Below, one piece after another: positions 7,636 to 49,350 of a stretch of DNA of 64,000 nt; the stretch's first letter is position 1; every line of letters starts with the position of its first letter. A program made the position numbers and the translations under genes. Source of the stretch: Scyliorhinus canicula (taxonomy: Eukaryota); NCBI RefSeq assembly GCF_902713615.1, contig NC_052147.1, forward strand, positions 201,903,140-201,967,139, written 5' to 3'. The notes below the pieces were generated by a model. The model searched no databases. It was not told the DNA's origin and worked only from the letters and a program-made list of their open reading frames with translations.

Positions 7636-8988
7636 GGGAGGAACTGAAAGAAATCAGCAATAGTAGAGAAATGGAGTTGGGGAAATTGATGGGATTGAAG
7701 GCTGAGAAATAGTGGATGTATTGGTGGTCATCTTCCAAGATTCTATGGACTCTGGAACAGTTCCTACAGATTGGAGGGCAGCTAATGTAACCCCACTATT
7801 TAAAAAGGAAAGTAGAGAGAAAAACAAAATTATAGACCAGTCAGCCTGACATTGGTAGTGGGAAAAATTCTATAGTCCTTATAAAAGATTTTATATCAGG
7901 ATACTTGGAAATCAGTGGCAGAGTCGGACAGAGTCAGCATGGATTTATGAAAGGGAAATCATGCTTGACGAACCTACTGGAATTCTTTTTGAGGAATTCT
8001 TCTGAGGATGTGACTAGTAGAGTTGACGAGGGGGAGCTAATGAATGTGGTTTATTTGGACTTTCAGAAGGCTTGCAACAAAGCCCCACATAAGAGATTAG
8101 TGGATAAAATTCAAGAGTATGAGATTAGAGGTAGTGTACTGAGACGGATAGGAAACTGGCTGGCAGCAAGGAAACTAAGAGTAGGGATAAACAGGTCTTT
8201 TTCCGAATGGCCGGCGGTGACTCGTGGGGTACCACAGGGATCAGTGCCGGAACTCCAGTTATTGACAATATATATTGATGATTTAGATGAGGGAACTAAA
8301 TGTACTATCTCCAATTTTGCAGATGGCACAAAGCTGGGTTGGAGAGTGAGCTGTGAGGAGGATGCAGAGATGATTCAGTTTGATTTAAAAAGCTGTATGA
8401 GTGGGCAAATGCATGGCAGATGCAGTATAATGTGGATAAATGTTAGTTATCCTTGTACACCAGTCACTGAAAGTAAGCATGTAGGTGCAGCAGGCGATGA
8501 AGAAGGCAAATGGTATATTGGCCTTCATAGCGATAGGATTCGAATCCAGGAGCAGGTATATCTTGATGCAATTATACAGGGCCTTGGTGAGACCACATCT
8601 TGAGTATTGTGTGCAGTTTTGGTGGTCTTATTTGAGGAAGAATGCATTTGCTATAAAGGGAGTGCAACAAGGGTTTACTGGACTGATTTCTGGGATGGTG
8701 GGACAGATGTATGTGGAGATATTGTGTTAGTTAGGATTATATTTTCTGAAGTTCAGGAGAATGAGGGGGAATCTCAAGGAAGCCTATAAAATTCTAACAG
8801 GATTGAACAGAGTGGGTGCGGAAAGGATGTTCCCAATGGTGAGGGAGTCCAGAACCAGAGGTCACAGTGTGAGAATATGAGGTAGACCATTTAGGACTGA
8901 GATGAAGAGAAAATCCTTCACCCAGATATTGGTGGGTCTGTGGAATTCGCTACCACAAAGTAGTTGAGGCAAAAGTATTATGGGCGGT

Positions 8989-9022
<34 letters not shown>

Positions 9023-9600
9023 CCTGGTGGGAGAATCGCTGGGGCGCCGCGCAAATTGTGCCACGCTGCCCCAACACCCGCACGCAATTCTCCCCCCCCC
9101 CCCCCCCCCCCCCAAACCGTGAGGTAACCGCGCATGCGCTAGTTGGCGTCGGCCCAACTGCGCATGCATGGGACCCAAGGTGCGCGGCTTTTACGCAGCG
9201 CCGGGTCTCTGACGCCACGCCGAGGCCCGGCCTGTCCCCGTAAACCACGCGATGCCCCTGCCAGCCCCACGGAGGGGGGAGAATAGGGGTCTGGGAACGG
9301 GCGCCGACGCCAGAGTAAAACATTCCAGTTTGTACTCCAGCGTCGGCACTTAGACTCCCGTTGGGAAAATCCCGCCCTATATGTTTTCAAGAAGGAGTTC
9401 GATATGGCTCTTTGGGTGTTGGGTGAAAGGGATCAAAGGATCTGGGGGGGGGGGGGGGGGGGGGGGGGGGAGTGTGGCCGGTGGGAAGAGGTGGGAACAG
9501 GCTATTGAGTTGAATGATCAACCATGATCATCATAAATGGTGGAGCAGGCTTGAAGGGGCAAATGGCCTACTCTGCTCCTATTTTCTGTGTTTCTATGTT
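7636..9600 (+). mobile_element. CR1 LINE, 5'-truncated, disabled
   Basis: ORF 7905-8603 has QHGFMKGKSCLTNL, GVPQGSV and FADGTKL; CR1 3' UTR present. Confidence 0.95.
8982..9377. mobile_element. GC-rich MITE, PIF/Harbinger-like, inserted in CR1
   Basis: Termini GGGCGG / CCGCCC, 3-bp TSD TAT (8979-8981 and 9378-9380). Removing it restores the CR1 sequence. Confidence 0.85.
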
Positions 9601-16557: not shown

Positions 16558-18126
16558 AATTTTTTAAATAAATGTTTTTATTGGGTTTTTAAACAAAGTA
16601 TATTCAACTCTGTACAACTGGAACAATTATTTGCAACACATAAGTAGGTGACTGTTTGGGGGGGGGGGGGGGGGGGGAAGGGGGGTGGAGACTGGGAAGG
16701 TAAATATACAGTTGGGTGCCGGAGAAAAATTACAGTGGGCAATACTCGAATGGGTTTGGTGTTGGTGTTGTCACATGCTTGTCCCGGACGGATCTCGCTG
16801 CCGTTGTCGTCTCGCGCTCACCTCCGCTTCTACCATTCCTCCTGTCTTTCGTCTGTATTCTCCTTGTTCTTTATTCCTGGAGATGCCAAGTTTGTTATCG
16901 TATCCCATGCCCTCCTTCTGGCTGTCATTTCCCTGCCTCCTCCCCACCTCCCTGTTTCTGCTCGCTTGTTCCCTGTCCCTTCCCTCCCGCCCCCTCACCC
17001 GCCCTCCTGTGGTTCGCCTTTCTTTCCTCTTAGGTTTAGCTGTCCCCTCCCCCTCTCCCAGTCTATTTCCCTCTCATGCTTTGGCTACTTTCCCCTGATT
17101 CTTGGCTACCTGGATATTCTTCTGCTTATTCATTGGCAACAAACAGGTCCCGGAACAATTGGGTGAATGGCTCCCACGTTCTGTGGAAGCCGTCGTCTGG
17201 GTGGTGCTGCTGACCGCCAGCCGAACAGGATTCTACGGCGGGCGATCAGGGAGGCAAAGGCAAGGGCGTCCGCCCTCCTCCCCAGGAATGGATCTGGCTG
17301 GTCTGAAACCCCGAAGACCGCCATTGCCTCGAAGAAGGCTGTCCAATACCCCGCAAGTGTGGGGCAAGACCAGAACATGTGGGCGTGGTTGGCCGGGCCT
17401 CCTTGGTACTGTTCACATCTATCCTCCACCTCCGGAAAGATCCTACTCATACGGGTTCTTGTTAAGGGGGCTCTATGTACCACTTTTAGCTTTGTCAGGC
17501 TGAGCCTTGCGCACGTGGAGGTGGTGTTGACCCTGTGTATGTAGTGCTTCGCTCCAGAGTCCCCATACTATTTCAATCCCCAGGTCCTCTTCCCATTTCT
17601 TTCTTGTTGCGTCCAGTACGGTGTCGGCCCTCTCTACTAGTCAGTCATACATGTCACTACAGTTTCCTTTATCTAGTATGCTTGCGTCCAGTAACTCTTC
17701 CAGTAATGTCTGTTGTGGGGGTTGTGGGTACATCCTTGTCTCCTTTCGTAGAAAGTTTTTGAGCTATAGATACCTTCGCTCGTTCCCCTGGCCAGCTGGA
17801 ATTTCTCAGTCAGTTCGTCCAGTGTTGCGATCCTGCCGTCCGTGTACAGGTCCCTGACTGTCAGTGTCCCCCCGTCCTGCCCCCACCTTTTGAAGGTGGC
17901 GTCAGTCAGTGCTGGTGTGAACCTATGGTTGTTGCAGATGGGAGCTTTGTCCAACATTTTGGTCAGGCCAAATTGCTGCCGAAGTTGGCTCCAGGATTGG
18001 AGGGTGGCTATCACCACCGGGCTGCTGGAGTGATTTTTGGGTGGGGATGGAAGTGCTGCCATGGTGAGGGCCCGGTGGGAGGGCCCCATGCAGGAGGCCT
18101 CTTCCGCACGCACCCACTCGGCTTTG
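16558..18126 (-). mobile_element. L1/Tx1-type LINE 3' fragment (second subfamily)
   Basis: ORF2 C-terminus ANHAHMFWSCP and AFASLIARRRIL; AATAAA and A tail; TSD tttgataaac (16548-16557 and 18127-18136). Confidence 0.9.
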
Positions 18127-18558
18127 TTTGATAAACGTGAAGTGTATTGATTTGGGCTAATATTTTATTCCAGTGTAGTACATAGCCGATTCATTAGGAG
18201 GTTCTGAAACAGCCTGTTTTCTTATGTGGTTTAAAAATCTGTGGTCCCATAAATCTTTCCACATTGCAGATATTTTGTAAAAATTCTACTTTTTAAAATA
18301 AATATGTTTTTGATGATTGTTATATTATCGAATTCAGTGCAACGGTTATTAATTCCACTACTGTGCAATAAACACATTTTTGTCTATAGGTACACCAAAG
18401 GTTGTGGTCAGGGCAGTGGTACTCCAAATCTTTAGGCCACAGAATAGTTGGGCACAGTTCATCTTCTTCCCTGCACCAAATCCAATTCTTGCCAGTCAAT
18501 GCTGAACATCCATGTTTGATGCTGACAAGGAGAATTTTGTACATTTGTGTGTATCAAT

Positions 18559-18986
18559 CGTGCAAAGTGTGGAAAGACAAATGATTCTATTTGCTTTAAC
18601 CTCCACGAGGACCATGGGGAAACAATCATTGATCTCCCTGTGGGGCTCCTAGAATACAAGCTCCCTAGGTCGGGGGCAGAGGCCAACCACCTGGGGCTCG
18701 TTAAGGCAGGGGATAAAAACAGACCCAACTTGGGGCCTGGTCAGAACTATCCTCCCAGCAAGATCTGCACTGAGTGAGATGCTGCGCTAAGCATGTAATT
18801 GTAAATAGGTAAATAAATTCACCTTCGCTCAGGAACATGAACCCGATGTTAACCATGAACATTTGACTGCTGCATCTCGGCAAGGTAGAATCGTAGTCTT
18901 GGAACATTGGTCCAGGACTTACTTCTGAAGTTGTTGTCGTCATGGTATTTATTGACAAGAACTGGGAATTGTAGCGAAGAACTACA
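18559..18986 (+). mobile_element. Probable solo LTR (428 bp)
   Basis: TCAAT on both flanks (18554-18558 and 18987-18991); ends CA; starts CG rather than TG; TATA-like GATAAAA then AATAAA. Confidence 0.55.
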
Positions 18987-19042
18987 TCAATGATCTAAGA
19001 TGATTTGTGCATATCGGAATCTTTTGGAGATTTTTTGTTTTC

Positions 19043-19640
19043 ATTCATGGGATGTGCGCATCACTGGTGAGGCCAACATTTATTGCCCATCGATAATTAT
19101 CTTTTGAGAAGGTGGCCGTGTGCTGCCTTTCTGAACAAACTGAAATCCATGTGCTGTTAGGAAGTGAGTTGCAGGATTTTTGACCCACTTTCAATGAAGG
19201 AACTATATAGTTCCAAGTCAGGATGGCTTGTGACTTGGTAAGAAACTTGAAGTTGGTGTGTCCCCTACATCTGCTACCCATGTTCTTTATAGATGGTAGA
19301 GGTTACGGGATTGGAAGGTGCTATTGAAGGAACCTTGGTGACGTGTTGCAGTGTTTCTTGTAGATGGAAAACACTGCTGCCACTGTGCAAAGGTGGAGGA
19401 TAGGATGCTAATCAAATGGGCTGCTTTGTCCTGGAAATTGTCATGCTTCATGAGTGCTAATGGAGCTGAACTCATCTAGGCAAATGGAGAGTATTCCATA
19501 ACACTCTTGACCGACTTTGGGGAGTCAGGAGGTGAGTTACTTTCTGCAGAATTCCCAGCCTCTGACTTGCTCCTGTAGCCAGATGTAGCTGGTCCAGTTC
19601 AGTATCTGGTCAATGATGACCCCCAGAATATTGATTGTGG
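19043..19640 (-). mobile_element. Non-LTR retrotransposon 3' fragment (CR1/L2-group lineage distinct from the main CR1)
   Basis: NILGVIIDQILNWTS and FQDKAAHLI motifs; 3' end catcccatgaatgaa. Confidence 0.75.
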
Positions 19641-20180
19641 AGACTGTCAGCCAATCGGAGGCCAGCAGCTCTTCTTTACTCAGCAGAGCCACCAGGAAGG
19701 CGAAGACTGCAGCCAGTACTACACCCATCCGAGGCCTCGGATTGAGGAGGGACTCGTGCACAGGTGAGTGATTGCACTCAGGAATTGCAGGGGAGAGGTA
19801 TGTCAGCAAAGGCAGGGATATGGATCACCGCTGACCTCATCCTGATGATGGGTCCCTCAATCAGGCAATGAGTGTCTTTGAATGAGGGTCTGCCAGCTAC
19901 CCACCACATCCCGAAAACCCGGTAGCTTGCAAGTGAGTACGCCAAGGTTTGCTAATCATGCTTATCATTTGACAAGCTGATTACCCACCCGTGGCTTGAA
20001 ACCAGCAGCAGTGGGATGGGACCCTTAAGTGGGTATTAATTGCCTGCTTATGAGCCTCAATTAGCAGAAGGAAGGTCTTCCGTTGGCCTTTCAGCCACAG
20101 ATTAATTGGGAGGAGATGGAGCAGTGACGGGGTTGCCTCCCGCCAGATTAGATGCCACCGTGCCACCAAATGGTAAAACT

Positions 20181-20915
20181 GGGCAGGATTTTTCAGATGT
20201 CAGGGCTTTTTGCCCCACCACCTGAAGAGTTGGAATGGAATGTGCCCCCACTGATGACAGTAGCCCACAGCCGTTTAGTGGTCTGAGGAGCATCAATTTG
20301 CTGGAAACGGGACTTTGGTCCCTCACTCGGATGAAAGTCCCTCCTTGGTGAGATCAGAGGGAAGGGAGCATCTGCCAGGGGAGGGGGAGGGAGGTGCACA
20401 GACCTCGGGTGCTGTGTGCCCAATGTGGAAAGGGGGCCCTTGTGGGATGTGCCCTCTCTCTTCCCATCTGAGGCCCAAGCAGGGTGACCTGCCAGTCTTT
20501 ACCCCACCCTTGAACCTTTTCCAAAAGCCTCAAAATTGAGGTTAGGTGGGAAGTTAGGGGCTAGTTTAGCTCACAAGGCTAATCGCTGGCTTTAAAGCAG
20601 GCAAGCAGGCCAGCAGCCACGGTTCGATTCCCGTACCAGCCTCCCCGGACAGGCGCCGGAATGTGGCGACTAGGGGCTTTTCACAGTAACTTCATTGAAG
20701 CCTACTCGTGACAATAAGCGATTTTCATTTTTTTTTCCAAGTGCCACTTAAGGGTGTCAGCTGTGGTGAGGGCAGGCCGCCAAAAGGCCTTGCCTGATCT
20801 AGGTAAAATTGTGGTCCGATCGGGCGTGGAAGGGCAGCCAGGAGGCAACCCAGAAAGACTATGCCCCACCCCATCTCCATCTTCAACTCACTGGTGAGGG
20901 ACAATAAAATCCCGC
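20181..20915. mobile_element. Harbinger-like non-autonomous element; related GC-rich sequence extends left to about 19645
   Basis: Termini gggcaggatttt / aaaatcccgc, similar to the other MITE ends. Confidence 0.5.
20557..20736 (+). mobile_element. SINE type C, young and full length
   Basis: ggggctagtttagctc...ggttcgattcccgtaccagc head and tail; CpG-rich. Confidence 0.9.
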
Positions 20916-21160
20916 AAAATTCATTTGCAAATCTTATGGCTCCTATTCCTCAACCGGTCTTGATTTATAATTTTTAATTATAGGGTGGCACGGTAGCACA
21001 GTGGTTAGCACTGTTACTTCACAGTGCCAGGGACCCGGGTTCAATTCCCAGCTTGGGTCACTGTCTGTGCGGTGTCTGTATGTTCTTTGTTGATCTTTGA
21101 GCTTCCAAAAAATGTTTTCAAGTGGTTCAGAGTCCTTTTAACTTGTTTATTATTAATTAC

Positions 21161-21470
21161 GGGCGGCACAGTGCTTATCATTGCTGCTTCACAGCGCCAG
21201 GGACCCAGGTTCATTTCCAGCCTTGGGTGACTGTGTGGAATTTGCTGTCTGCATGGGTTTCCTCTGGGTGTTCCGGTTTCTTCCCGCAGTCCAAATATGT
21301 GCAGGTTAGGTGGCTTGGTCAGACTAAATTTCCCCTTATTATCCAGGGATTTGCAGATTGGGTGGGGTTATGGGGATGGGGTGAGTGAGTAGGCCTTGGA
21401 AGGTGCTCTTTTGGAGTTTGGGTGCAGACTCGATGGGCTGATTGCCCTCCTGCCACTGTGGGGATTCTTC
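21161..21470 (+). mobile_element. SINE type A, diverged
   Basis: Head, core and CR1-type tail recognisable. Confidence 0.8.
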
Positions 21471-21744
21471 TATCTAAACCTGTCAACAATATTGACTGTC
21501 TGATTCCTTCCTGGGTTTTGAACTCCAACACCAAGAGTGGGAAAAGCATTCCACAGGACAGGGCCTCCAGGTGAAGCCAGGATTCTTCGCTGCAGCAATT
21601 GGAACTAGGAGGGAGGAATAATGCAGTTGATTTGACTTTGCGATGTGTTGCAATGTTAAAAGGTGCTATATAAATGCAAGTTGTTGTCAATTGTAGCAGG
21701 CACCACCTAAGTGATTGGGATTTGAATCCATACCATTTGCCAAA

Positions 21745-21998
21745 CCTATGAATGCGTTAACACTGAAAATCCCCGAGTCACCACATTCCGGCGCCTGTTC
21801 GGGTTCACTGAGGGAGAATTCAGAATGTCCAATTCAACTAACAAGCATGTCTTTCGGGATTGTGGGAGGAAACCGGAGCTCCTGTACACGGGGAAAATGT
21901 TCAGTCTCCACACCGACTTGTGACCCAAGCCGGGAATTGAGCCCGGGTCCCTGGCACTGTGAAGCAACAGTGCTAACCACTGTGATACCGAGCCACCC
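21745..21998 (-). mobile_element. SINE type B
   Basis: Head, core and partial type-B tail. Confidence 0.85.
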
Positions 21999-22404
21999 TA
22001 TAATTAAAAATTATAAATCAAAACCGGTTGAGGAATAGGAGCCATAAGATTTGCAAATGATTTACTAACAGAGACAAATCAAAATAGTGCTTTCATTGCC
22101 CCAGTATTTCTCAGATAATAGATGAATTTTGGACCAATAGAGTGAGAACTTGTTGGATTGCGAGTTTTCTTTAAGAAATGTTGACTAACTAGGAATGGAA
22201 AGCTTCCAAAGACCAGAAAAATCCCTTTGTTTGTTCCAATTTACCCTTTCAGTTTGTATATCTTGTTCCAATTGCTCAAAATAAAAGGATGCTTATGATG
22301 GGTTGAAGTCAAATACTGAGTCAGAGGGCTGTTTACTTGTCTAATTGCCGGAGTCTTTGTGGAACTGTTGCAGAAATAATGACAAAAGGGCAAGTTTAGC
22401 TGGT

Positions 22405-22610
22405 TGACTGGTTTAGCTCAGTGGGCTAGACAGCTGGTTTGTGATGCAGAGCAAGGCCAGCAGCGCGGGTTCAATTCCTGTACCAGCTGAGAATTCTGAA
22501 TTCTCCCTCTGTGTACCCGAACAGGCGCCAGAATGTGGTGACTAGGGGCTTTTCACAGTAACTTCATTGCAATGTTAATGTAAGCGCCTACTTGTGACAA
22601 TAAAGATCAT
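22405..22610 (+). mobile_element. SINE type C variant with a longer type-B tail
   Basis: Type-C head joined to attctgaattctccctctgtgtacccgaacaggcgcc...tgacaataaa. Confidence 0.85.
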
Positions 22611-22704
22611 TTACATTTACAAGTGATGAAGTGGCAGGCGTGGTGATGCTTGATGCTATAGCTGCAAGCGTGCATATAGGCAGCCTGGACCCTGATTTTT
22701 GGTC

Positions 22705-23090
22705 ATAGAATCGTATTGGACAGAAAAGGCCCTTCGGCCCATCTAGTCTGCACAAACAATAACTACTCCTAATCACACGCTAATCGTACTTACCAGCAAT
22801 TGTTCCATATCCTTGAATGTGATGGTGTTTCAAGTACTCATCTAAGTGCTTTTTAAAGGTTATAAGGTTTCCAGGTAGTGCATTCCACAATCTCACCACC
22901 CTTTGAGCGAAAATGTTTTTTATCAAATCCCCTCGGAATCTCCTGCCCCTCACCCTAAAACTATGCCCCCTTGTGATTGACCCCTCAACCAAGGGGAACA
23001 GCTGCTTCCTATTTGCCTTGTCCATAACCCCTCATAAGCTGATACATCTCAATCATATTTCCCCCAACCTTCTATACAGTTCCAACATAA
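22705..23090 (-). mobile_element. CR1 LINE 3' fragment
   Basis: LFPLVEGSITRGHSF...QRVVRLWNALP. Confidence 0.85.
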
Positions 23091-23289
23091 CCTGTTTGCT
23101 CTTGGTGTTGACTGTTTGAAGCTGCATCATCATTAGTTGAAGTGCATACATAGAAAAGCAACTAGAAAAGTTGTCCTAAAACATTGATTGTTTCCTGGCA
23201 GCTAGTCAACTAAGCACAGCATTATAAAACAGGCAACAAGAAAAACAGAACTTGCATTAGCTTCATGAAACATCGGTTCTCATGGCAGA

Positions 23290-24280
23290 AAAGATAGAGA
23301 TGGACCATAATGGCAAAATGTGTTGAAGAATTTCAGCTGGCTTGGAAAAATATCAGTATTGTTTCTGTGAATGAAAAGAGGCTGGCCAGAAAGGGCTTCC
23401 AGCACCATTGTGTGTATGAATGGATCTAAATTAATTTTTACCAAGCCATTTCCCCTTCCCTGTCTCTCCATTGTACAAGAAGGTTGCCAAACTTTAATGT
23501 GTAGTCCATGAAGAAAACTTTTTGCAATCTTAACTTTATGGTACTCATTTGCCACATCAGTGGTGCAAGCTTGCTATCCCTATAGTTCGAAATAGAAACA
23601 GCTAAAATAGAGCAGGAGTATCCCAAAGCCCCAAATCACTTGAGCAGCCCCATTATGTCCCCCACCATGGCAACTGGGTTGGAAATATATGGCAAAAGGT
23701 CATCAGCATACAAGGATGCTCTACCCACCCCTACCTCACTATCCCCTTCTGCTTATCCAAGCTCCTCAGTGCAATGGCAAAGGGCTCTATCACCAGCACA
23801 AACAAACGGGGGGGAGACATAGGACACCTCGTCCTCGTCCCTATGCAGTTGAAAATATCCTGAGTTTGCCTCATTTGTATGAACACTCGCCTTCGGTTTC
23901 TTTTTTTAAATTTAGAGTACCCAATTCATTTTTTCCAATTAAGCGGCAATTTAGTGTGGCCAATCCTCCTAACTTACACATTTTGGGTTGTGGGGACGTA
24001 ACCCACGCAAACGCAGGGAGAATTTGCAAAGTCCACATGTGGCCCAGAGCTGGGATTGAACCTGGGACCTCGGCGCTGTGAGGCAGCAATGCCACCGTGC
24101 TACCCCTTGCTTTCGGTTTCTTATGCAACAATTTAACCCATGTCACAAACTTAGGCCCAATTCCAATCTGTTCCATCACTGCAAATAAATAAACACTCTA
24201 CTCGATCAAAAGCCTTCTCCGCATCTAGTGCCACATTTATCTCCTGCTCCCCTAGGCCCCCCCATTCTGATGGGGTTCAT
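23290..24280 (-). mobile_element. Old L1/Tx1-type LINE RT fragment
   Basis: Minus-strand ALDAEKAFDRVE, IGPKFVTWVKLL and degenerate RGTRQGCP and LYADD regions. Confidence 0.75.
23901..24106 (-). mobile_element. SINE type D
   Basis: Poly(A) tail; about 16-bp TSD tcgccttcggtttctt / ttgctttcggtttctt. Confidence 0.9.
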
Positions 24281-25124
24281 GATTTAATTCTTACTCTGTT
24301 ATTGAAACAAAGAGAACGATAGGGAAATATAAATGAATGACTGAATCCTGCTACATGGAAGCCTGAAAAATAGAAAGGGGTAGGGAGGGAAAACCACCCA
24401 AGTTCTGGAATGGAACAAAACTCAAGCTTTCTAATCTAGAAGACTTGTGTTTCTGTGGCAACTGGACAGTTTTCCAACATGACTTGGACAATATTGTGCA
24501 TGAATAACTTGAGCTGTACCTTTGGAAAATGATTGTGAAGATTACTAGTTTACTGGTAGCTTTTCTAATCGTTTGGGATTCTATTTCTGACTTGTAAATT
24601 TTCAGTGATATTGTAGATATTCAGTGACAACTGCACAATGATTTTTTGGCGGAAGGAGGGGAAAGAGTATTGCATCTTATTTTTTGTTCAAGTGAATCAG
24701 CACTTGTGAGACATGATTCAAATGTATTTTCCCAAACACCTCCCATGTATCATCAAATGTGTTAGAAATCATTCTAAGAACGCCTGGCTAAATGGCTGTA
24801 TCTTCTATGGTGTTATCTTCCTTAAACGTTAAAAATGTCAGTAACCCAGTTTGTCATCAAAATTATAGAAGTGATTTTGCCCTCCTCCATTGTATAATTT
24901 TAATCAGACAAGAAAATGAAATGAAAAACTAAACTGTAATTGAAAACATAGGGTATGTTTTTGTTCAGCATATCTTTTCTACACGATGTGAATTTCCAGT
25001 AAGCGGATTTTTCTAAATTTTTAATCCAATGCTGCTTCAGATTAATTGATTTTAGTATTACAACTGATTTAATTAAACAAAATTTAATTTGATTGTAGTC
25101 AAACTTCCATTTCTTTGTTGCCTT

Positions 25125-25470
25125 GTGGATAGCACAATTGCTTCACAGCTCCATGGTCCCAGGTTCGATTCTGGCTTGGATCACTGTCTGTGTGGAGTCT
25201 GCACATCCTCCGCGTGTGTGCGTGGGTTTCCTCCGGGTGCTCCGGTTTCCTCCCACAGTCCAAAGATGTGCAGGTTAGGTGGATTGGCCATGATAAATTG
25301 CCCTTAGTCTCCAAAATTGCCCTTAGTGTTGGGTGGGGTTACTGGGTTATGGGGATAAGGTGGAGGTGTTGACCTTGGGTAGGGTGCTCTTTACAAGAGC
25401 CGGTGCAGACTCGATGGGCCGAATGGCCTCCTTCTGCACTGTAAATTCTATAATTCTATGATATCTATGA
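25125..25470 (+). mobile_element. SINE type A
   Basis: Near-identical to 3427-3767; (ttctatga)-like end. Confidence 0.9.
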
Positions 25471-27799
25471 ATCGAATTAAGATGCACAACAGAACAAAAA
25501 TGATTAAGGAATTTAAGAATAGTTTTAAAAATCTGCAGCTGTTTCATATAACCAACTGGATCTTTATGGTGGAATGGAGATCTTGTAGACTGCTGAATTT
25601 TGTATTGTGCATTTAACGGGTTCACTGCTTCCCTTTCCGTTATAAAAGCTGTTACACCATGTGCAGAAGCTGCATTAATCACCATACTATTTTGGTCTTT
25701 TGTGCAATTCTATGACTCATAATGGAGTGATCGGAATTTATGCAAACAGTGTATCCATCACCTTATTTCAGATGTTGCTTGTTAATTTTTCAGAAGCTGA
25801 AGTAATTCATTAGTTTTCTCTGAAAAAATAATTCTGTTTCAAAATTGTGGGCAGCTGCAATGGTTAGCCCTGTATATTCATGGAAACATGTTTGCTGAGT
25901 ACTTTTCAACTGAGATTCTCTGTGAAAGGAGCAGGCAATCTTTAAACTTGGAAATCAGAACTTTTTCTCTTGAAGTGAAATTGACGCTGTTGGCGGTACA
26001 AAAAAATGACTTTTAAAAAAGCAACTACAACCCCATTGGCTTTAGTGCATCACAAAGTTATGCGGTTTATGTGCTATTCCTGCTGTAAATTTTGGGATAA
26101 AAAGTAAAATTGTTTTAATTTTAACCTACCTTCTCTCATCTATTTCTCAATATTAGCAGTTTAGTAATTTGAGTTGAAAGTCCAACAATTATATAAAGTT
26201 TGAACAAGTTGAATTTTTTTAAAGTTATCGTATATTGAAGATTACATGTACATATAAATTAACCAGAATTCCACTTACTTTTTGACTCCAAAAATAAGCA
26301 CATTGTCAGAGACATTACTATTATATAGATCGACTTGCTACTGCAAGTATAATTTGAGGCATTGTAACCCTCTTCGTACTAGCACATTGACAGCAAAGTA
26401 ACAGCAAAAATGAACAGTTAACATTAGCTGGCTCCACCATCTTTACTGTGGCTGCAGGAGATTGGGATCTGAGCCACCTATAAAAGAAAGAAATATTCAT
26501 CACTGCCAAGATAAGCAAAGTGTGGCCAGAATGATGAAAGTCACAAATGCAACTTTAGACAAAGATTTGCTCATATATGACATATTTGTGACTTTTGAGC
26601 TACTACGCGACTGCAAAAACATATCCTGATCTGTTTTTGGTGATTCTGCTTCACTGTTAAAACGGAGATGTAAATACGATATAATGGCCGCAATAGGAGC
26701 TTTTCAAAGTTAGCTCCAGAGGCAGTACTTACATGTAAGTGCACTGATACATCAGCTCACTGTGCTGTGGAGGATGGGGCAGTGTCTTGCATTATTTATT
26801 GAGTTTTCAATCACAGCAATATTACCGGGAGGTTTCTTCAGCATTTTGCTTGCAGGGCGAGGGATAAAATGGTCAGATATGTCAGTTTTCGGCAATTATA
26901 TCAGATTGGCAATGCAGAAACTGATCCACCTTTTTCATATAAGACGTTGCAAGAAGGGGGCATGAAAATATGAAATAAATGAAACCTTTGGGTCTGCCAT
27001 GTAACTGTTGTGGGGGCGGGGGGAAACAATGTCTCATCTCCATTTTACTCAATATTATATAAAGTTATTAATCTACATACATGTATCTGTAATGGGGAAC
27101 TGATAATACTTCTTGGTTTATTTTCCAATGACTGCATATACTTGGTTTGTGATGAAAACAAATGTCACAAAAACGATTGACAAATCGGAATCCTAGACCG
27201 ATTAATTCAGTTTTAGCAATCTGGATGGATAATTTTTAAAATGTATACACCCACTACCAAGCTGCTGCTTTTAAATACTAGATACATCAGAATAAGTGCT
27301 AGTTAGACTACGTGTATTGTGTATTAGTTATGAGGTAGGTAGGTAAAAAGTGATTCTTGACTTAATCTGAAAATTTGCAATGTCCATTAGAATTTGCACA
27401 AAAAAACTTCACCTTCCCTCTGTTTTATTCCGATTATTTGGTGAAGGATAGTTGGGAACCAATAGTTACAGTTTATAACATTTATTTAGAGTTACACACT
27501 ACACACAAACGCCTCCTAATCCAACAGGTACAGTTTAAAATTTTGCCCATTTATTTGGGCTGAAGGGAATCCACACTTGATGTTCTCTGCCTGCATACAA
27601 TTAAACACAATTAATTCCATCCCTTTACCCTCTGGTGTGGATATGACTAAATTAGTGCATAGTGCAACCAGTCGCTGACTGAAGAAACTACTAGGAAACT
27701 GAACAACCAAGGGTCATTGTTTTTTTTTGTTTTATGAATGCAGTAATTGAATTGTAATGTTGTTTACAGTACTGCACTACATTTTCCTGTTTTATTTTG

Positions 27800-31700: not shown

Positions 31701-32890
31701 TGCTCCCCCCTCTCCCTCTGGGCTCGGATGGAGATCAATTCCCCCCTCATCACCGCCTTTAATGCCTCCCAGACCGTCCCCACCCGAACCTCCCTGTTAT
31801 CATTGGCCTCGAGGTATCTCTCAATACACCCCCGGACCCTCCCGGCCACCTCCTCCTCTGCCAGCAGCCCCACCTCCATGCGCCAGAGCGGATGTTGGTC
31901 CCTCTCTTCCCCCAGCCCGAGGTCCATCCAGTGCGGGGCATGGTCCGAAATGGCAATGGCAGAGTATTCCACTTCCTCCACCCTCGGCACCAGCCCCCTG
32001 CTCAGGACAAAAAAGTCAATCCTCGAGTAGGCCTTATGTACATGGGAGAAAAACAAGTATTCCCTGGCCCTTGGCCTCTCAAACCTCCAAGGGTCCACCC
32101 CCCCCCCCATCTGGTCCATAAATCCCCTCAGCACCTTAGCCGCCGCCGACCTCCTACCCGTCCGGGACTTGGATCGATCCAATGGGGGATCCAGCACAGT
32201 GTTAAAGTCTCCCCCCATGATCAGGCCCCCCACCTCCAGGTCCGGAATGCGGCCCAGCATACGCCGCATGAACCCCGCATTGTCCCAATTTGGGGCATAA
32301 ACATTCACCAACACTACCCGCTCCCCCTGCAGCTTGCCACTCACCATCACGTACCTCCTGCCACTGTCAGCCACCACCTTCAACGCCTCAAACAACACCT
32401 TCTTCCCCACCAGGATCGCCACCCCTTTACTCTTCTCGTCCAGCCCTGAGTGGAATACCTGGCCCACCCACCCCTTTCTCAGCCGGACCTGGTCCACCAC
32501 TCTCAGGTGTGTCTCCTGGAGCATGGCCACATCCGCCTTCAGTCCCTTCAGGTGCGCAACTACTCGGGCCCTTTTGACCGGCCCATTCAGCCCCCTCACA
32601 TTCCAGGTTATCAGCCGGATCCGAGGGCGCCCTGCCCCCTTCCCCTGCCGATTAGCCATACCCCATCCCTTGCCCACCCTCGGCCAGCGTCCCACGCTCT
32701 GCCAGTTTCCCACGGCGGCACCTCCCCCCCTCCAGCACTCCCTGCGTCCTCCAGCTCCTTCCTGACCGTTTCAGCAGCAACCCGGTAACCCCCCCCTCCC
32801 CTCCCCCCCAGGCTAGGACCCCTCCTAGCCGCGCCCCCCCCCCCCCCCTCTCTACAGCACTCCCGTGAGCCAGCTATCTTCTGCTTTTAT
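28761..32890 (-). mobile_element. Young L1/Tx1-type LINE, lacking ORF1, nearly complete ORF2
   Basis: GC-rich and CpG-retaining; AATAAA and A tail; TSD gaggtatttct (28750-28760 and 32891-32901). Confidence 0.95.
28990..32659 (-). pseudogene. L1-type ORF2 (APE endonuclease, reverse transcriptase, C-terminal Cys/His domain)
   Basis: ITWNVRGLN, VYAPN, GGDFN, SRIDFF, SDH; GKAPGPDG, YRPISLLN, LDAEKAFD, GTRQGCPLSP, YADD; CARC...HMFWAC. One frameshift near 31600, in-frame stops near 30742 and 30064, and a 3' deletion. Confidence 0.95.
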
Positions 32891-41830: not shown

Positions 41831-43300
41831 GCCATACACATCGTGGTCATCGGCGAGTTGCTGAGTCTCCTCTGCTCTTTCCACCCACCATCAGTTCTTT
41901 AGGTCGCAGGTTCTTTGAACATTGTTGGAACTAGTTATGGGTGGCAGGTTCAACTGAGGATTGGATTGGATTTGATTTATTGTCAGGTGTACCGGGGGAC
42001 AGTGAAAAGTATTGTTCTGCGTACAGTTCAGACAGATAATTCCATACATGAAAAAACATAGGGCATACATGAATACACAATGTAAATACATAGGCACAGG
42101 CATTAGGTAGAGTGTAGTACTACTCCGTAGAGATCAGTACATTTAGAAAGTCGAAGAGAAAGGACAGATAATAATGCAAGCAATATGGGTAATGACCAGA
42201 GTATGACAGGAAGGGACAGAACATACGAACATAAAACTGAAAGAGCAAGTAGGGACAGATGAAAAAACAATAGTAAGAGAACAAATTAAAGGCCAGGTTA
42301 GCGGTGAGGCACCGACTGAATAGCTCTTTCTTCTCAGGGTCTTGAGTCCAGCAACATTGAGTCTCCTGCGGCAGAGTTTTTTCAGTCTGTGCCGGTTTGG
42401 GGCCAGGCTGATGGAGATGGACATGGCAGAGAGGATTAGCCGGTGGTCAGTCCAGCAGTCATCAGCTCCGGTCATGGTGAGGGTGATGCAGACATGGTCC
42501 CTTGCTCGGACGATGATATAGTCTATTGGTTGCCAGTGCTTGGAGCGGGGTTGTTGCCAAAGTCTTCTGCTTGTCCCTCTGGCGGAACAGGGTGTTCATG
42601 ATGACCAGGTCATGTTCTAAACATTTTGTCAGGAGGAGAACTCTGTTGCCGTTTGTTTTCCCTACACCGTCCCTGCCTAACACACCTTATGAAAGGTTTG
42701 CACAATTCTCAACTCTAGCATTCAAGTCACAGAGGGGAATCAGATTGTCACCCTTTGGGATGTGGGACAGCGATTGGTTCAGCCTGGAGTAGAATGCCTT
42801 GTTTGTCTCCTCTGTTGCATCTAAGTTTGGAGCGTAGGCCCTGATGGCTCTAATGTGCTGCTTCTGGGCCAGGGTGAGCTGTAGGGTCATGCAGCATTCG
42901 CTCACCCCGCCGGGGGGGGGGGGGGGGGATTCATTGAGACATCCAATCAATTTGTTTTTTACAGTGAAGCCAACCCCATAGAGTCAACAATCTTCTTCTG
43001 GTTTGCCTTTCCAGAAGAAGGTGTATCCACCACCTTGTTCTTTAAGCTGGTCTTCTCCTGCCAGTCATGTCTCGCTCAGGGCGATGATGTCGATGTCAGA
43101 GTTCTCAGGCTATGAAGGCAGTGCGATGTTCAGGTCTGTTGCTGTTGGTGTTGACCATAAGGGTTCTGACATTCCAGTTTCCGAAATTCATTTGGGTAGG
43201 TGGAATTGGGGTGGAAGATGCCTGTGAATGGATTCTTTTAACATGCGGTGGTTGTTGCGTACCAACGACCTCGCGGTCCCAGTGGAGCGAGCTCTTGGTC
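41830..43300 (-). mobile_element. RTE-clade (BovB-like) LINE endonuclease region, interrupted
   Basis: IRAYAPNLDATEETNKAFYSRL...DLNARV, GVGKTNGNRVLLLTKCLEHDLVIMNTLF and ADDCWTDHRLI. Confidence 0.85.
41959..42135 (-). mobile_element. Rex1/Babar-type LINE 3' end
   Basis: Sense end tacttttcactgt...cctgacaataaatcaaatcc(aatcc)n. Clade assignment is from recall. Confidence 0.6.
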
Positions 43301-45729: not shown

Positions 45730-46150
45730 TCAGATTGGCAGACTGTAATTAGCGGATGCTGCTGGGATCAGTGTGGGCATCTCAATTTTTAAAAATCTAT
45801 ATCCGTGACTGGGTGAAAGGACCAAGTTTATTTTAACCAAATTGTTGATGATGCAAAGGTAAGTGGAAAAATGTAATGAGGAAGACATGAGTTTGAAAAA
45901 GGTTATAGATGGGTTAAGAGAGTAGGCACAAGATTGGAAGATGGGGTGCAATGTGGGAACATGTAAGGTTATCCACTTTGGTAGGAAGAATAGAAAAACA
46001 AAGTAGTTAAATGCAGAGAGACTACAGAATGCTGTAGTACAGAGGGATCTGGATGTCTTGGTAGATGAAGTACAAACATTTAGCAGGCAGGTACATCAAG
46101 TAATTAGGAAGGCAAATAGGATTTTGGCCTTTATTGAAAAGGGAATGATA
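45730..46150 (+). mobile_element. Old CR1 RT fragment
   Basis: Degenerate VDDAK, VIHFGRKN and QRDLDVLV motifs. Confidence 0.8.
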
Positions 46151-46550
46151 TATCACCTCCCAAGATTTGAATGTTGAGTCCAAACCAGCAGGTAGGAAAA
46201 GGTGATTATTGCAAATAGAGGATAGCGAAGACAGGGAAAGTAGCAAGAAATTCTGCCTAACCTGCTTCCAAATTCTCATGGAAGAAGGAGACCACCACTG
46301 GATTTGAGGAAAATCTAACAGGGGGAAAAAGGCAACAATGCACTAACTATTGCACAAAGAATAGAAGTAGTGCAGGAGCACGCTTCCATTTGTCCCCAAA
46401 TGGACCCGGAATCACTAAACCATAACAATATTTTTTGAATATTGGCTGCCCAATGATAAAACAACAAAGTGGGGAGGGTGAGGCCCTCCGATTGTCTGTA
46501 CCTTTGGAGCAGAACACCATGGATTCTAGGAGTCCTACTCCACCAAATTC

Positions 46551-46803
46551 TCCCACGTTCTCCCTGTGTGTGCGTGGGTTTCCTCCGGGTGCTCCGGTTT
46601 CCTCCCACAGTCCAAAGATGCGCAGATTAGGTGGATTGGCCATGCTAAATTGCCCTTAGTGTCCAAAATTGCCCTTATTGTTGGGTGGGGTTACTGGGTT
46701 ATGGGGATAGGGTGGAGGTGTGGGCTTGGGTAGGATGCTCTTTCCAAGAGCCGGTGCAGACTCGATGGGCCGAATGGCCTCCTTCTGCACTGTAACGTCT
46801 ATG
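46551..46803 (+). mobile_element. SINE type A, 5'-truncated
   Basis: Core and CR1-type tail. Confidence 0.9.
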
Positions 46804-47013
46804 AAAAATGGAAGAGCATACAAATTAGCAAGAAAAAGTAATAGAGCTGAGGCCTGGAAACAGTTTAAAATTCAGCATAGGCGGACAAAATGATTGATTT
46901 AAGAAAGGAAAAATGCAATATGAAAGTAAGTTAGCGGTGTATTCTGTAAATATATAAAGAGAAAAAGGTTGAAAAAAATGAATGTAGGCTCCTTAGTCAG
47001 AAATGGGGGAATT

Positions 47014-49129
47014 TGTTGTGCACGAGGACCAGACAGGTTTTGTAAAGGGGTTGTGCACGAGGACCAGACAGGTTTTGTGAAGGGAAGGCAGCTGAACACG
47101 AATGTGCGGAGATTGCTGAATGTCATTATGATGCCGGCGATTGAGGGGGTGGCAGAGATAGTGGTGGCACTGGATGCGGAGAAGGCCTTCGGTGGAGTGG
47201 GGGTACCTATGGGAGGTGTTGGGGAGGTTTGGATTTGGTGAAGGGTTCATTAGATGGGTACGGCTGTTATATGAGGCCCCGATGGCGTGCGTGGCTATGA
47301 ATAGAGGTCGGAGTACTTCCGGCTTTACCGAGGGACCAGGCAGGGTTGCCCCTTGTCCCCCTTGTTGTTTGCACTGGCAATCGAGCCGCTGGCGATGGCA
47401 TTGAGAGATTCAGAGAGGTGGAGAGGCTTGGTGCGAGGTGGAGAGGAACATAGGGTGTCGTTGTATGCCGACGACCTGTTACTGTATGTGGCGGACCCGG
47501 TGGGAGGGATGCCGGGAGTGATGGAGTTACTAGCCGAGTTTGGGACCTTCTCAGGTTATAAATTAAACTTAGGCAAGAGCGAGGTGTTTGTGGTGCACCC
47601 TGGAGACCAGGAGGAAGGAATTGGTAGGCTCCCGCTTAGGCGGGCAGGGGAGAGCTTTAGGTACCTGGGGGTGCAAGTGGCCAGGGACTGGGGGACTCTC
47701 CACAAGCATAACTTTACCAGGCTGGTAGATCAGATGGAGGAGGAGTTCAGGAGGTGGGACATGCTGCCATTGTCGTTGGCGGGGAGGGTGCAGTCCGTCA
47801 AAATGACAGTGCTTCCGAGGTTTTTGTTCCTTTTTCAGTGCCTGCCCATATTTATCCCCAGGGCCTTCTTTAGGAGAGTGACTAGCAGTATTCTGAGTTT
47901 TGTGTGGGCACATGGGACTCCGAGAGTGAGGAGGGTGTTCCTGGAGCGAGGAAGGGATGGAGGTGGGCTGGCACTGCCCAACCTTCTGGGGTACTATTGG
48001 GCAGCCAATGTGTCAATGGTGCGTAAATGGGTGATGGAGGGGGGGAGGTGTGGCGTGGAAAAGAATGGAGATGGCGTCATGTAGAGGTACGAGCCTGGGT
48101 GCTATGGTAACGGCACCGTTGCCGCTCTCCCCTAAGAGGTTTACCACGAGCCCGGTGGTGGCGGCGACCCTAAGAATCTGGGAACAATGGAGACGGCATC
48201 GGGGGGAAACAGGGGCCTCGATGGAGGCTCCACTGGGTGGCAACCATCGGTTCATCCCGGGGAACACGGATGGGGGATTCAGGGGGTGGCAAAGGACGGG
48301 CATCAGCAAATTGAGGGACCTGTTTATTGGCGGGAGGTTTGCGGGCCTGGGGGAACTGGAAGATAAATTTGGCCTTCCCCAGGGGAACATGTTCAGATAC
48401 CTGCAGGTAAAGGCGTTTGCTAGGCGACAGGTAGAGGGATTCCCTTTGCTGCCCTCGCAGGGGGCGATGGACAGAGTGCTTTCGGGGGTGTGGGTAGGAA
48501 AGGGGAAGGTGTCTGACATCTATAAGGTAATGCAGGAGGTGGAGGAGTCGTCAGTGGAGGAGCTGAAGGCTAAATGGGAGGAGGAACTCGGGGAGCAGAT
48601 AGAGGACGGGACTTGGGCGGATGCCTTGGACAGAGTCAACTCTTCCTCCTCATGTGCGAGGCTTAGTCTCATCCAATTTAAGGTGCTGCACCGGGCCCAC
48701 ATGTCCGGGACTAGGATGAGTAGGTTCTTCGGGGGTGAGGACAGGTGCACCAGATGTTCGGGGAGTCCTGCGAACCACGCCCATATGTTCTGGGCATGCC
48801 CAGCACTGGAAGAATTCTGGAAGGGGGTGGCGGGGACGGTGTCGAGGGTGGTTGGATCCAGGGTCAAACCAGGGTGGGGACTCGCGATTTTTGGAGTTGC
48901 GGTGGAGCCGGGAGTGCAGGAGGCGAAAGAGGCCGGTGTCCTGGCCTTTGCGTCCCTAGTAGCCCGTCGAAGGATTCTGTTACAATGGAAGGATGCAAGG
49001 CCCCCAAGTGTGGAGACCTGGATCAGTGACATGGCGGGATTTATAAAATTGGAAAAGGTCAAATTTGCCCTGAGAGGATCAATACAAGGGTTCTATAAAC
49101 GATGGCAGCCTTTTTTGGACTTCCTGGCT

Positions 49130-49162
<33 letters not shown>

Positions 49163-49350
49163 TTATTGTAGTGTTTATTCTGTAACTTTATAGTGTGTTA
49201 ATATGCGTTGTTGTTAAAATGCTGGGTTGTTCATGGGGATGGGGCGAATGTATATGATTGTTAATATTATTGTTATTTTCGGTATTTTACTAAGGTGCGT
49301 CAATGTTGTATAAAATCAAAATTTCTCAATAAAAATGATTTAAAAAAAAA
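47014..49350 (+). mobile_element. Young 5'-truncated L1/Tx1-type LINE (same family as 28761-32890)
   Basis: YADD and C-terminal domain ORFs; AATAAA and poly(A); TSD gaaatgggggaatt (47000-47013 and 49351-49364). Confidence 0.95.

What the first reader, a model, noticed from the sequence alone, without database searches (positions are those of the whole stretch)
9127..9176. 50-bp double GCGCATGCGC module shared by MITEs of two different transposon superfamilies
Seen: the reverse complement of 9127-9176 (Harbinger-like MITE, 3-bp TSD) matches 59441-59490 (hAT-like MITE, 8-bp TSD) at 45/50 nt, all differences being transitions, while the termini are unrelated. The module is quasi-palindromic with two GCGCATGCGC-type sites. 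Known: this is the NRF1 consensus, a methylation-sensitive promoter motif. Inferred: cargo capture or recombination between unrelated DNA transposons, potentially spreading paired NRF1 sites as a mobile cis-regulatory cassette.
Basis: partly seen in the sequence, partly recalled or inferred. Interest (0 to 1): 0.72.

Follow-up and report, generated by a model that had tools for sequence, protein, structure and literature searches.

The report
Shark transposon borrowed another transposon's core
A 53-base palindrome holding two perfect binding motifs for the host factor NRF1 really is shared by two unrelated small cut-and-paste transposons in a catshark genome. Read data suggest that a young hAT-type family copied it from an older Harbinger-type family and then multiplied; whether any protein binds it is untested.

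Summary
The reverse complement of 9127-9176 matches 59441-59490 at 45/50, and the match extends to 47/53 (9127-9179 against 59438-59490). Every difference is a transition and the similarity stops sharply at both ends.

Element B (59368-59932) has CAG-type inverted ends and a perfect 8-bp target duplication, which is hAT-type. Element A (8982-9377) has GGGCGG/CCGCCC ends and a TAT/TAT duplication, and it sits inside a LINE tail. That fits Harbinger, but it is not the canonical TWA target.

I laid contigs of public runs on B.
- B's left arm is a very abundant repeat in the window's species and is absent from a sister species.
- The module is abundant in both species, mostly with different flanks and a 30-bp phased repeat.
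- The module variant typical of B is about as deep as B's arm, and a non-identical contig bridges arm and module.
- The sister species' contigs stop at B's end, which looks like an empty site.

So the module is part of the hAT family and is older in the other context. This supports capture, Harbinger-type to hAT-type. The NRF1 motif match is exact, but binding and regulation are untested. Copy A has already lost one site to CpG decay. This scan had already noted NRF1-motif Harbinger MITEs elsewhere in this genome; the hAT chimera is the new part. It is a new member of a known kind, the composite MITEs.

The parts
8979..8981 (.). Left copy of the 3-bp target duplication (TAT) of element A
   Evidence: the host LINE tail is interrupted here (paralogues aligned)
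8982..9377 (-). Element A: a 396-bp non-coding element with inverted ends GGGCGG...CCGCCC (Harbinger-type by its 3-bp duplication). It is a chain of internal palindromes with the module near its centre. The module lies in the opposite orientation to the one in B.
8990..9020 (+). Run of 31 C just inside the left end of A
9092..9113 (+). Run of 22 C inside A, 13 bp from the module
9127..9179 (-). Shared 53-bp module, copy A (47/53 to copy B)
9130..9139 (.). Intact GCGCATGCGC (NRF1 consensus) in copy A
   Evidence: consensus per PMC10810270
9160..9169 (.). Decayed site GCGCATGCAT in copy A (two adjacent CpG-type transitions)
9378..9380 (.). Right copy of the 3-bp target duplication (TAT) of element A
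59360..59367 (.). Left copy of the 8-bp target duplication TGCGTGCC of element B
59368..59932 (+). Element B: a 565-bp non-coding hAT-type MITE (84% G+C, CpG observed/expected 0.83)
   Evidence: In one search depth jumps at 59368 and RNA reads of other copies diverge exactly there.
59368..59383 (+). Left inverted end CAGGGCCGGCTCAAGG
59368..59437 (+). Left arm of B. It holds a 17-bp direct repeat (59408-59443) with the motif CCCGGGGCGCCA, which recurs in the right arm. The arm is abundant in organism A and absent from organism B contigs.
59438..59490 (+). Shared 53-bp module, copy B: a palindrome with two intact sites
59448..59457 (.). Intact GCGCATGCGC site 1
59478..59487 (.). Intact GCGCATGCGC site 2, 30 bp from site 1
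59514..59877 (+). GC-rich minisatellite inside B (period about 25, about 13 units). Each unit holds CTCGGGTCC, the same 9-mer as the module's left edge.
59917..59932 (-). Right inverted end (CAGCGCCGGCTCTAGG on the minus strand)
59933..59940 (.). Right copy of the 8-bp target duplication TGCGTGCC

Best explanation
The 53-bp palindrome (two GCGCATGCGC sites 30 bp apart around a GC-rich spacer) is the core of an older, very abundant lineage of Harbinger-type MITEs. That lineage is present in the window's species and in a sister species. Element A is a diverged, decaying member of that lineage.

A non-autonomous hAT-type element acquired one copy of this core. The most likely route is template switching during repair of an excision gap. 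The alternative is a nested insertion that was later trimmed. The resulting chimera (family B) then amplified to very high copy number in the window's species only. The copy at 59368-59932 is a young insertion that is absent from the sister species.

Shown here: the homology and its sharp limits; the different end types; that family B is a multi-copy family carrying the module; and that the module exists without B arms in the sister species.

Inferred: the direction of transfer, the repair mechanism, and any role of the motifs. The motifs are perfect NRF1 consensus sites. Whether they recruit NRF1 and act as a mobile regulatory or anti-silencing cassette is not shown.
For: 1. Homology: 47/53 identity, transitions only, E about 2e-13, local score 76 against a shuffle maximum of 33, and nothing significant outside it.

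2. Different transposition chemistry: B has an 8-bp duplication TGCGTGCC and CAG-type ends. A has the 3-bp duplication TAT and GGGCGG ends, and it interrupts a LINE tail whose paralogues run uninterrupted.

3. Contigs laid at 80% likeness or more on 59150-59560:
- The unique flank 59304-59359 has depth 1-3 (X1) and 11-23 (X13).
- B's left arm has 17,000-106,000 (X1) and 14,000-35,000 (X5), but 0 in X13, the sister species.
- The module has 158,000-190,000 (X1), 46,000-55,000 (X5) and 17,000-27,000 (X13).

4. Most module-bearing contigs carry other sequence before 59446 (45-55 contigs per run). Joints and loose ends show further GCGCATGCGC units in phase at 30 or 60 bp (tables 5c and 7).

5. 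At 59469 the B-type letter T makes up 91% (X1) and 66% (X5) of the depth in organism A but 16% in organism B. In X5 the T-variant depth (about 31,000) equals the B-arm depth (18,000-35,000).

6. Contig record 24 (X5) spans 59385-59497 with 8 mismatches and 2 gaps. It is therefore another B copy with arm and module joined.

7. X13 depth in the bin 59360-59373 is 13.2, which equals 23 x 8/14. Organism B's orthologous contigs therefore stop at 59367, exactly at B's end, as an empty site would.

8. The centre of the module, TGGCGTCGGC, recurs as an inverted copy elsewhere in A. The sequence 14 bp upstream of the module in A matches the majority flank at 12/13. Both fit a module that is native to the A-type lineage.
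Against: - Summed contig depths are not copy numbers, and contigs drop rare variants.
- Only one bridging contig was listed by the tool, and 374 loose-end rows were not shown.
- A's TAT duplication is not the canonical Harbinger TWA.
- No junction footprint proves template switching over nested insertion followed by deletion.
- There is no evidence at all for NRF1 binding.
Confidence: 0.68

Rival explanations
1. Mobile NRF1 cassette. The paired sites are bound by the host's NRF1, and their spread by two transposon families seeds promoters, CpG-island-like hypomethylated patches or insulators.
For: Three of the four sites equal the preferred NRF1 sequence GCGCATGCGC (PMC10810270). Both elements look like CpG islands: G+C 64-84% and CpG observed/expected 0.8-1.0, against 0.29-0.47 in the flanks. 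MITEs are known to spread factor-binding motifs (PMC5950925, listed).
Against: No binding, accessibility or methylation data exist here. Copy A lost one site through two CpG transitions, so that copy is not protected. High CpG content in B is equally explained by youth: its 8-bp duplication is perfect and the site is empty in the sister species. RNA reads showed no start sites (table 6: none). The window around both copies is LINE-rich, and its long ORFs gave only retrotransposon domains or none, so no gene was found nearby.
Confidence: 0.2
2. Both families took the module independently from a host promoter, for example a bidirectional NRF1-type promoter, and not from each other.
For: hAT elements of this genome were noted to capture host promoter and exon fragments (earlier notes s1-249153 and s1-246648, not checked here). 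NRF1-site minisatellites in host promoters were also noted (s1-237866, not checked).
Against: A and B share the non-motif spacer and the sub-variant left edge CTYGGGTCC, which the majority carriers lack. The bulk of module copies in both species sit in a repeated, TE-like context with phased units. No single-copy host source was seen.
Confidence: 0.07
3. The module is private to this one B copy, through local gene conversion, a nested fragment or a misassembly, and is not part of the family.
For: Only one B copy lies in the window. The region is GC-rich and repetitive.
Against: A non-identical contig joins arm and module (record 24). The depth of the B-type variant matches the arm depth. The tool listed no loose ends at the arm/module boundary, although many rows were hidden.
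Confidence: 0.04
4. Convergence or chance: two GC-rich palindromes built from the same motif happen to look alike.
For: Both elements are rich in GC palindromes.
Against: The 20-bp spacer and both edges are also shared. Identity is 47/53 with transitions only, E is about 2e-13, and no shuffle comes close.
Confidence: 0.01

Closest known systems
MER6/MER6A composite MITE of mammals (mariner ends plus the V domain of a SINE), PMC6887750
   Same: A short non-autonomous cut-and-paste element carries an internal module that comes from an unrelated transposon family, and it spread that module during its own burst.
   Different: There the donor is a retrotransposed SINE and the module is a conserved domain of unknown role. 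Here both partners are DNA-transposon MITEs, and the module is a 53-bp palindrome made of two NRF1 consensus sites.
Pack-MITEs and transduplication by hAT, PIF and Mutator elements (for example mHatvine-10.1 in grapevine, PMC2817404)
   Same: A hAT-type non-autonomous element holds foreign DNA between its own ends, and the composite is then amplified. Capture during gap repair is the usual explanation.
   Different: Those cases capture host gene fragments of hundreds of bases. Here the cargo is only 53 bp and comes from another transposon.
MITEs that amplify transcription-factor motifs (plant MITEs, PMC5950925; Xenopus hAT, Harbinger and Kolobok MITE enhancers, PMC12676858)
   Same: High-copy MITEs carry ready-made factor-binding motifs and scatter them through the genome.
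   Different: In those studies binding or open chromatin was measured; here nothing was. Those papers describe no exchange of the motif module between superfamilies.
NRF1-motif Harbinger-type MITEs already noted by this scan in the same catshark genome (s1-249269, s1-231821, s1-203737)
   Same: The same GCGCATGCGC sites with 30-bp phasing in the centre of palindrome-rich Harbinger-type MITEs. One search shows the same phased units around the module.
   Different: Those notes concern the Harbinger-type family alone. The hAT-type family carrying the same core is the new element here.

Membership tests
hAT superfamily, non-autonomous (element B) | 8-bp target-site duplication | tested here: met
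   TGCGTGCC at 59360-59367 and 59933-59940, 8/8 identical
hAT superfamily, non-autonomous (element B) | Short terminal inverted repeats that start with CAG (YARNG type; this consensus is recalled from general knowledge) | tested here: met
   CAGGGCCGGCTCAAGG against CAGCGCCGGCTCTAGG, 14/16
hAT superfamily, non-autonomous (element B) | Related autonomous element with a hAT transposase and the same ends | not tested
   None lies in the window, and no eukaryotic genome search was available.
MITE (element B) | Small, non-coding, many copies with different flanks | tested here: met
   565 bp. Arm depth is 10^4-10^5 against 1-3 for the unique flank. Reads of other copies diverge exactly at 59368.
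PIF/Harbinger superfamily, non-autonomous (element A) | 3-bp target-site duplication, usually TWA | tested here: inconclusive
   A 3-bp direct duplication TAT/TAT flanks perfect GGGCGG/CCGCCC ends. The length fits but the sequence is not TWA, and this is a single copy. An 8-bp duplication is absent.
PIF/Harbinger superfamily, non-autonomous (element A) | Ends shared with an autonomous element that encodes a DDE transposase and a Myb-like protein | not tested
   No such element lies in the window. Earlier scan notes call the family Harbinger-type, but they are unchecked.
PIF/Harbinger superfamily, non-autonomous (element A) | Multi-copy family with these arms | not tested
   No second copy in the window.
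NRF1 binding site | Match to the consensus GCGCATGCGC / GCGCNTGCGC | tested here: met
   Exact at 9130, 59448 and 59478; decayed at 9160. Consensus from PMC10810270.
NRF1 binding site | Bound by NRF1 in vitro or in vivo; unmethylated state | not testable with these tools
   No ChIP, ATAC or methylation data.
Composite (Pack-type) MITE | Internal segment homologous to foreign DNA and present across the family's copies | tested here: met
   A 53-bp segment homologous to the core of the other family. A bridging contig and matched variant depth support it. The support is semi-quantitative only.

The most novel reading that the evidence does not exclude
The NRF1-site palindrome is a portable 'success module'. 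Any non-autonomous DNA transposon that holds it gains in amplification. It could do so by recruiting NRF1 in the germline to stay unmethylated and open, or through its hairpin during excision and repair. This would explain its retention in Harbinger-type MITEs of two species and the species-specific burst of the hAT chimera that acquired it.
Probability: 0.1. Interest if true: 0.8.

Novelty: new member of a known kind. Interest (0 to 1): 0.42.

Why it matters
It gives a datable example in a vertebrate of one family of small DNA transposons taking the core of another family and then bursting in a single species. If the motifs are bound, thousands of paired NRF1 sites were spread by two independent vehicles. 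That would make cartilaginous fishes a good system for asking two questions: do transposons recruit a methylation-sensitive host factor to escape silencing, and do such copies seed CpG-island-like promoters? As it stands, the finding is a solid piece of transposon natural history and not a demonstrated regulatory system.

Tried and rejected
- Extended homology outside the 53 bp. The only candidate is GCGYCAGAGAC (11/12) beyond a 27-bp indel. It is not significant in the gapped alignment. It is also part of B's own 17-bp direct repeat, so I do not count it.
- Other copies of either element or of the module in the window. None were found, including CpG-decayed forms of the motif.
- Exact-pattern scans for the module in metagenome contigs and in prokaryotic genome contigs: 0 hits each, as expected for shark DNA.
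- Rfam scan of the whole window: no family reached its threshold, so the palindrome is not a known RNA.
- Earlier findings searched by sequence, and one search by words: blank. One call failed on too many words.
- Literature. No paper was found on NRF1-motif transposons in sharks or on GCGCATGCGC in transposons. The 'NRF1' of the Xenopus MITE paper is a different protein, the ER membrane sensor NFE2L1.
- A TA (Tc1/mariner-type) duplication for A was considered. It needs asymmetric ends, so TAT is preferred.

Full report
**What is in the sequence**

The reverse complement of 9127-9176 and 59441-59490 agree at 45 of 50 positions. BLAST and a Smith-Waterman alignment extend this to 47/53, 9127-9179 against 59438-59490. 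The E-value is about 2e-13, and the local score is 76 against 23 +/- 3 (maximum 33) for 200 shuffles. The similarity ends sharply on both sides.

All six differences are transitions. Four are CpG-type decays. Three of these are in copy A, and two of them turn one GCGCATGCGC into GCGCATGCAT. The fourth is in copy B, at 59469.

The 10-mer GCGCATGCGC occurs three times in the 64-kb window, and all three lie inside these two modules. A pattern that tolerates CpG decay finds no further sites.

The module is a near-palindrome. Its 20-nt arms are 85% complementary. The single-strand DNA hairpin has dG -24.2 kcal/mol, z -5.4. The two sites are 30 bp apart.

**The two carriers**

- Element B spans 59368-59932 (565 bp).
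  - Its ends are CAGGGCCGGCTCAAGG and CAGCGCCGGCTCTAGG.
  - A perfect 8-bp duplication, TGCGTGCC, flanks it. That is the hAT signature.
  - Its left arm holds a 17-bp direct repeat with the motif CCCGGGGCGCCA, which recurs in the right arm.
  - To the right of the module lies a GC-rich minisatellite (59514-59877, period about 25). Its units contain CTCGGGTCC, the same 9-mer as the module's left edge.
- Element A spans 8982-9377 (396 bp).
  - It interrupts the tail of a CR1-like LINE. Three paralogues in the window run through the insertion point.
  - Its ends are GGGCGG and CCGCCC, flanked by TAT/TAT.
  - It holds two long C runs (31 and 22), and its body is a chain of palindromes with the module near the centre.
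  - It has no 8-bp duplication. A 3-bp duplication fits PIF/Harbinger, but TAT is not the usual TWA and I have only this one copy.
- Both elements look like CpG islands. G+C is 64-84% and CpG observed/expected is 0.8-1.0, against 0.29-0.47 in the flanks.

**Family-level evidence from public reads**

Earlier notes of this scan say that the genome is a catshark and that a very abundant Harbinger-type MITE carries GCGCATGCGC at 30-bp phasing (s1-249269 and others, which I treated as leads).

I found DNA runs of the same species (coded organism A) and of a relative that holds 18% of the sampled words (organism B). I then laid their contigs, plus one RNA run, on 59150-59560 at 80% likeness or more.

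| Stretch | X1 (organism A) | X5 (organism A) | X13 (organism B) |
|---|---|---|---|
| Unique flank 59304-59359 | 1-3 | 0 | 11-23 |
| B's left arm (59360-59443) | 17,000-106,000 | 14,000-35,000 | 0 (59374-59415) |
| Module (59444-59485) | 158,000-190,000 | 46,000-55,000 | 17,000-27,000 |

Further results from the same call:
- In all runs most module contigs carry a different sequence before 59446 (45-55 contigs per run with one consensus).
- Joints and loose ends show further GCGCATGCGC units at 30 and 60 bp. This is the phased repeat noted earlier by the scan.
- At 59469 the B-type T makes up 91% and 66% of the depth in organism A but 16% in organism B, where C restores a CCGGCGCC palindrome.
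- In X5 the T-variant depth (about 31,000) equals the arm depth (18,000-35,000).
- One contig (record 24) spans 59385-59497 with 8 mismatches and 2 gaps. It is therefore another B copy with arm and module joined.
- RNA reads of other B copies diverge from the window exactly at 59368, which confirms the end of the element.
- Organism B's depth in the bin 59360-59373 is 13.2, which is 23 x 8/14. Its orthologous contigs therefore stop at 59367. An empty site would look like this.

**Reading**

The module is an integral part of a multi-copy hAT-type family, and that family is abundant only in the window's species. The same module is abundant without hAT arms in both species, in a phased, palindrome-rich context that matches the Harbinger-type MITEs.

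A and B share the left edge CTYGGGTCC. Most other carriers read differently there. In organism B, depth in the bin 59430-59443 is only 502, against 17,000 in the next bin. B's module therefore seems to come from an A-like subvariant.

A's own link to the majority carriers is weak. It rests on a 12/13 match 14 bp upstream of the module (score 21 against a shuffle maximum of 20) and on the recurrence of the module's centre elsewhere in A.

The best explanation is one capture event, from Harbinger-type to hAT-type, followed by a species-specific burst of the chimera. I infer template switching during gap repair, possibly primed by the GGCGCC microhomology that B's arm motif shares with the sequence next to the donor core. 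Nested insertion followed by trimming is not excluded. No junction footprint decides between the two.

**The regulatory claim**

GCGCATGCGC is the preferred NRF1 site. The human homodimer binds it with a Kd of 0.31 uM and needs the intact sequence for activity (PMC10810270). That is all that can be said here.
- There are no binding, accessibility or methylation data.
- Copy A has lost one site to CpG decay.
- B's intact CpGs are explained by its youth.
- RNA reads on the module (14, on one strand) come from one diverged Harbinger-type copy, and the tool reported no start sites.
- The surroundings are LINE fragments, and the long ORFs I scanned gave only retrotransposon domains or none.

**Comparison with what is known**

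Composite MITEs are known. MER6 joins mariner ends to a SINE domain (PMC6887750). Pack-type MITEs, including a hAT-type one, amplify captured DNA (PMC2817404). MITEs that multiply factor-binding motifs are also known (PMC5950925; PMC12676858).

I found no paper on NRF1-motif transposons in sharks. This scan has noted the Harbinger-type family several times on other DNA of this genome. It has also noted traffic in the other direction, a hAT tip inside a Harbinger-ended element (s1-228647, unchecked).

The hAT chimera that carries the Harbinger core is the new item. It is a new member of a known kind.

**Limits**

- Summed contig depth is not a copy number, and contigs hide rare variants.
- One run stands for the sister species.
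- Many loose-end rows were not shown by the tool.
- Run and organism names were coded, so the species names rest on earlier notes.

Noticed in passing
window: 8990-9020, 9092-9113, 9444-9470, 16658-16677, 32834-32848, 42912-42928, 49131-49160, 53725-53751, 56565-56584, 58819-58834, 59954-59965: Eleven runs of 12-31 C (or G) in 64 kb. Two lie inside element A. Others lie in or next to LINE fragments (9444-9470, 32834-32848, 49131-49160) or in unrelated DNA. Long poly-C/G tracts seem to be a general feature of this genome or assembly.
   Followed up: partly
window:59150-59291: An extremely abundant repeat in both species, with summed contig depth of 10^5-10^6. It ends sharply at 59291 and holds an AATAAA-like signal. 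It is probably the end of a SINE or LTR. I observed it only.
   Followed up: no
window:28792-32713 (- strand): A LINE with long open frames carrying an endonuclease domain (Exo_endo_phos, E 9e-17) and reverse transcriptase (E 2e-18 and 2e-13). G+C is 58-62% with strong C skew, so it may be a young copy. A second reverse-transcriptase fragment lies at 47353-48084 (+), followed by a long open frame without a Pfam match (48050-49171) that runs through a G30 run.
   Followed up: partly
window:59514-59877: A GC-rich minisatellite inside the hAT-type element. Its units contain CTCGGGTCC, identical to the left edge of the shared module, so the array may have grown out of the module's edge. Four contigs of organism A continue differently after 59514, so the array may be private to some copies.
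   Followed up: partly
window:788-824: Another note on this window proposes a minimal hammerhead ribozyme in a Penelope terminus. The Rfam scan of the whole window at gathering thresholds reported no family. I did not look further.
   Followed up: no
window:59444-59487 (RNA run X22): Fourteen oligo-dT RNA reads, nearly all on one strand, come from one diverged Harbinger-type copy of the module elsewhere in the genome (11 of the 14 share the same five variant letters). At least one module-bearing MITE is therefore part of a polyadenylated transcript.
   Followed up: no
window:9144-9153 and 9303-9312: The centre of the module in A (TGGCGTCGGC) is perfectly complementary to a 10-mer 150 bp away. 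That 10-mer is itself one arm of a further hairpin (9303-9320 / 9330-9347). Element A is built from recurring GC-rich palindromes.
   Followed up: partly
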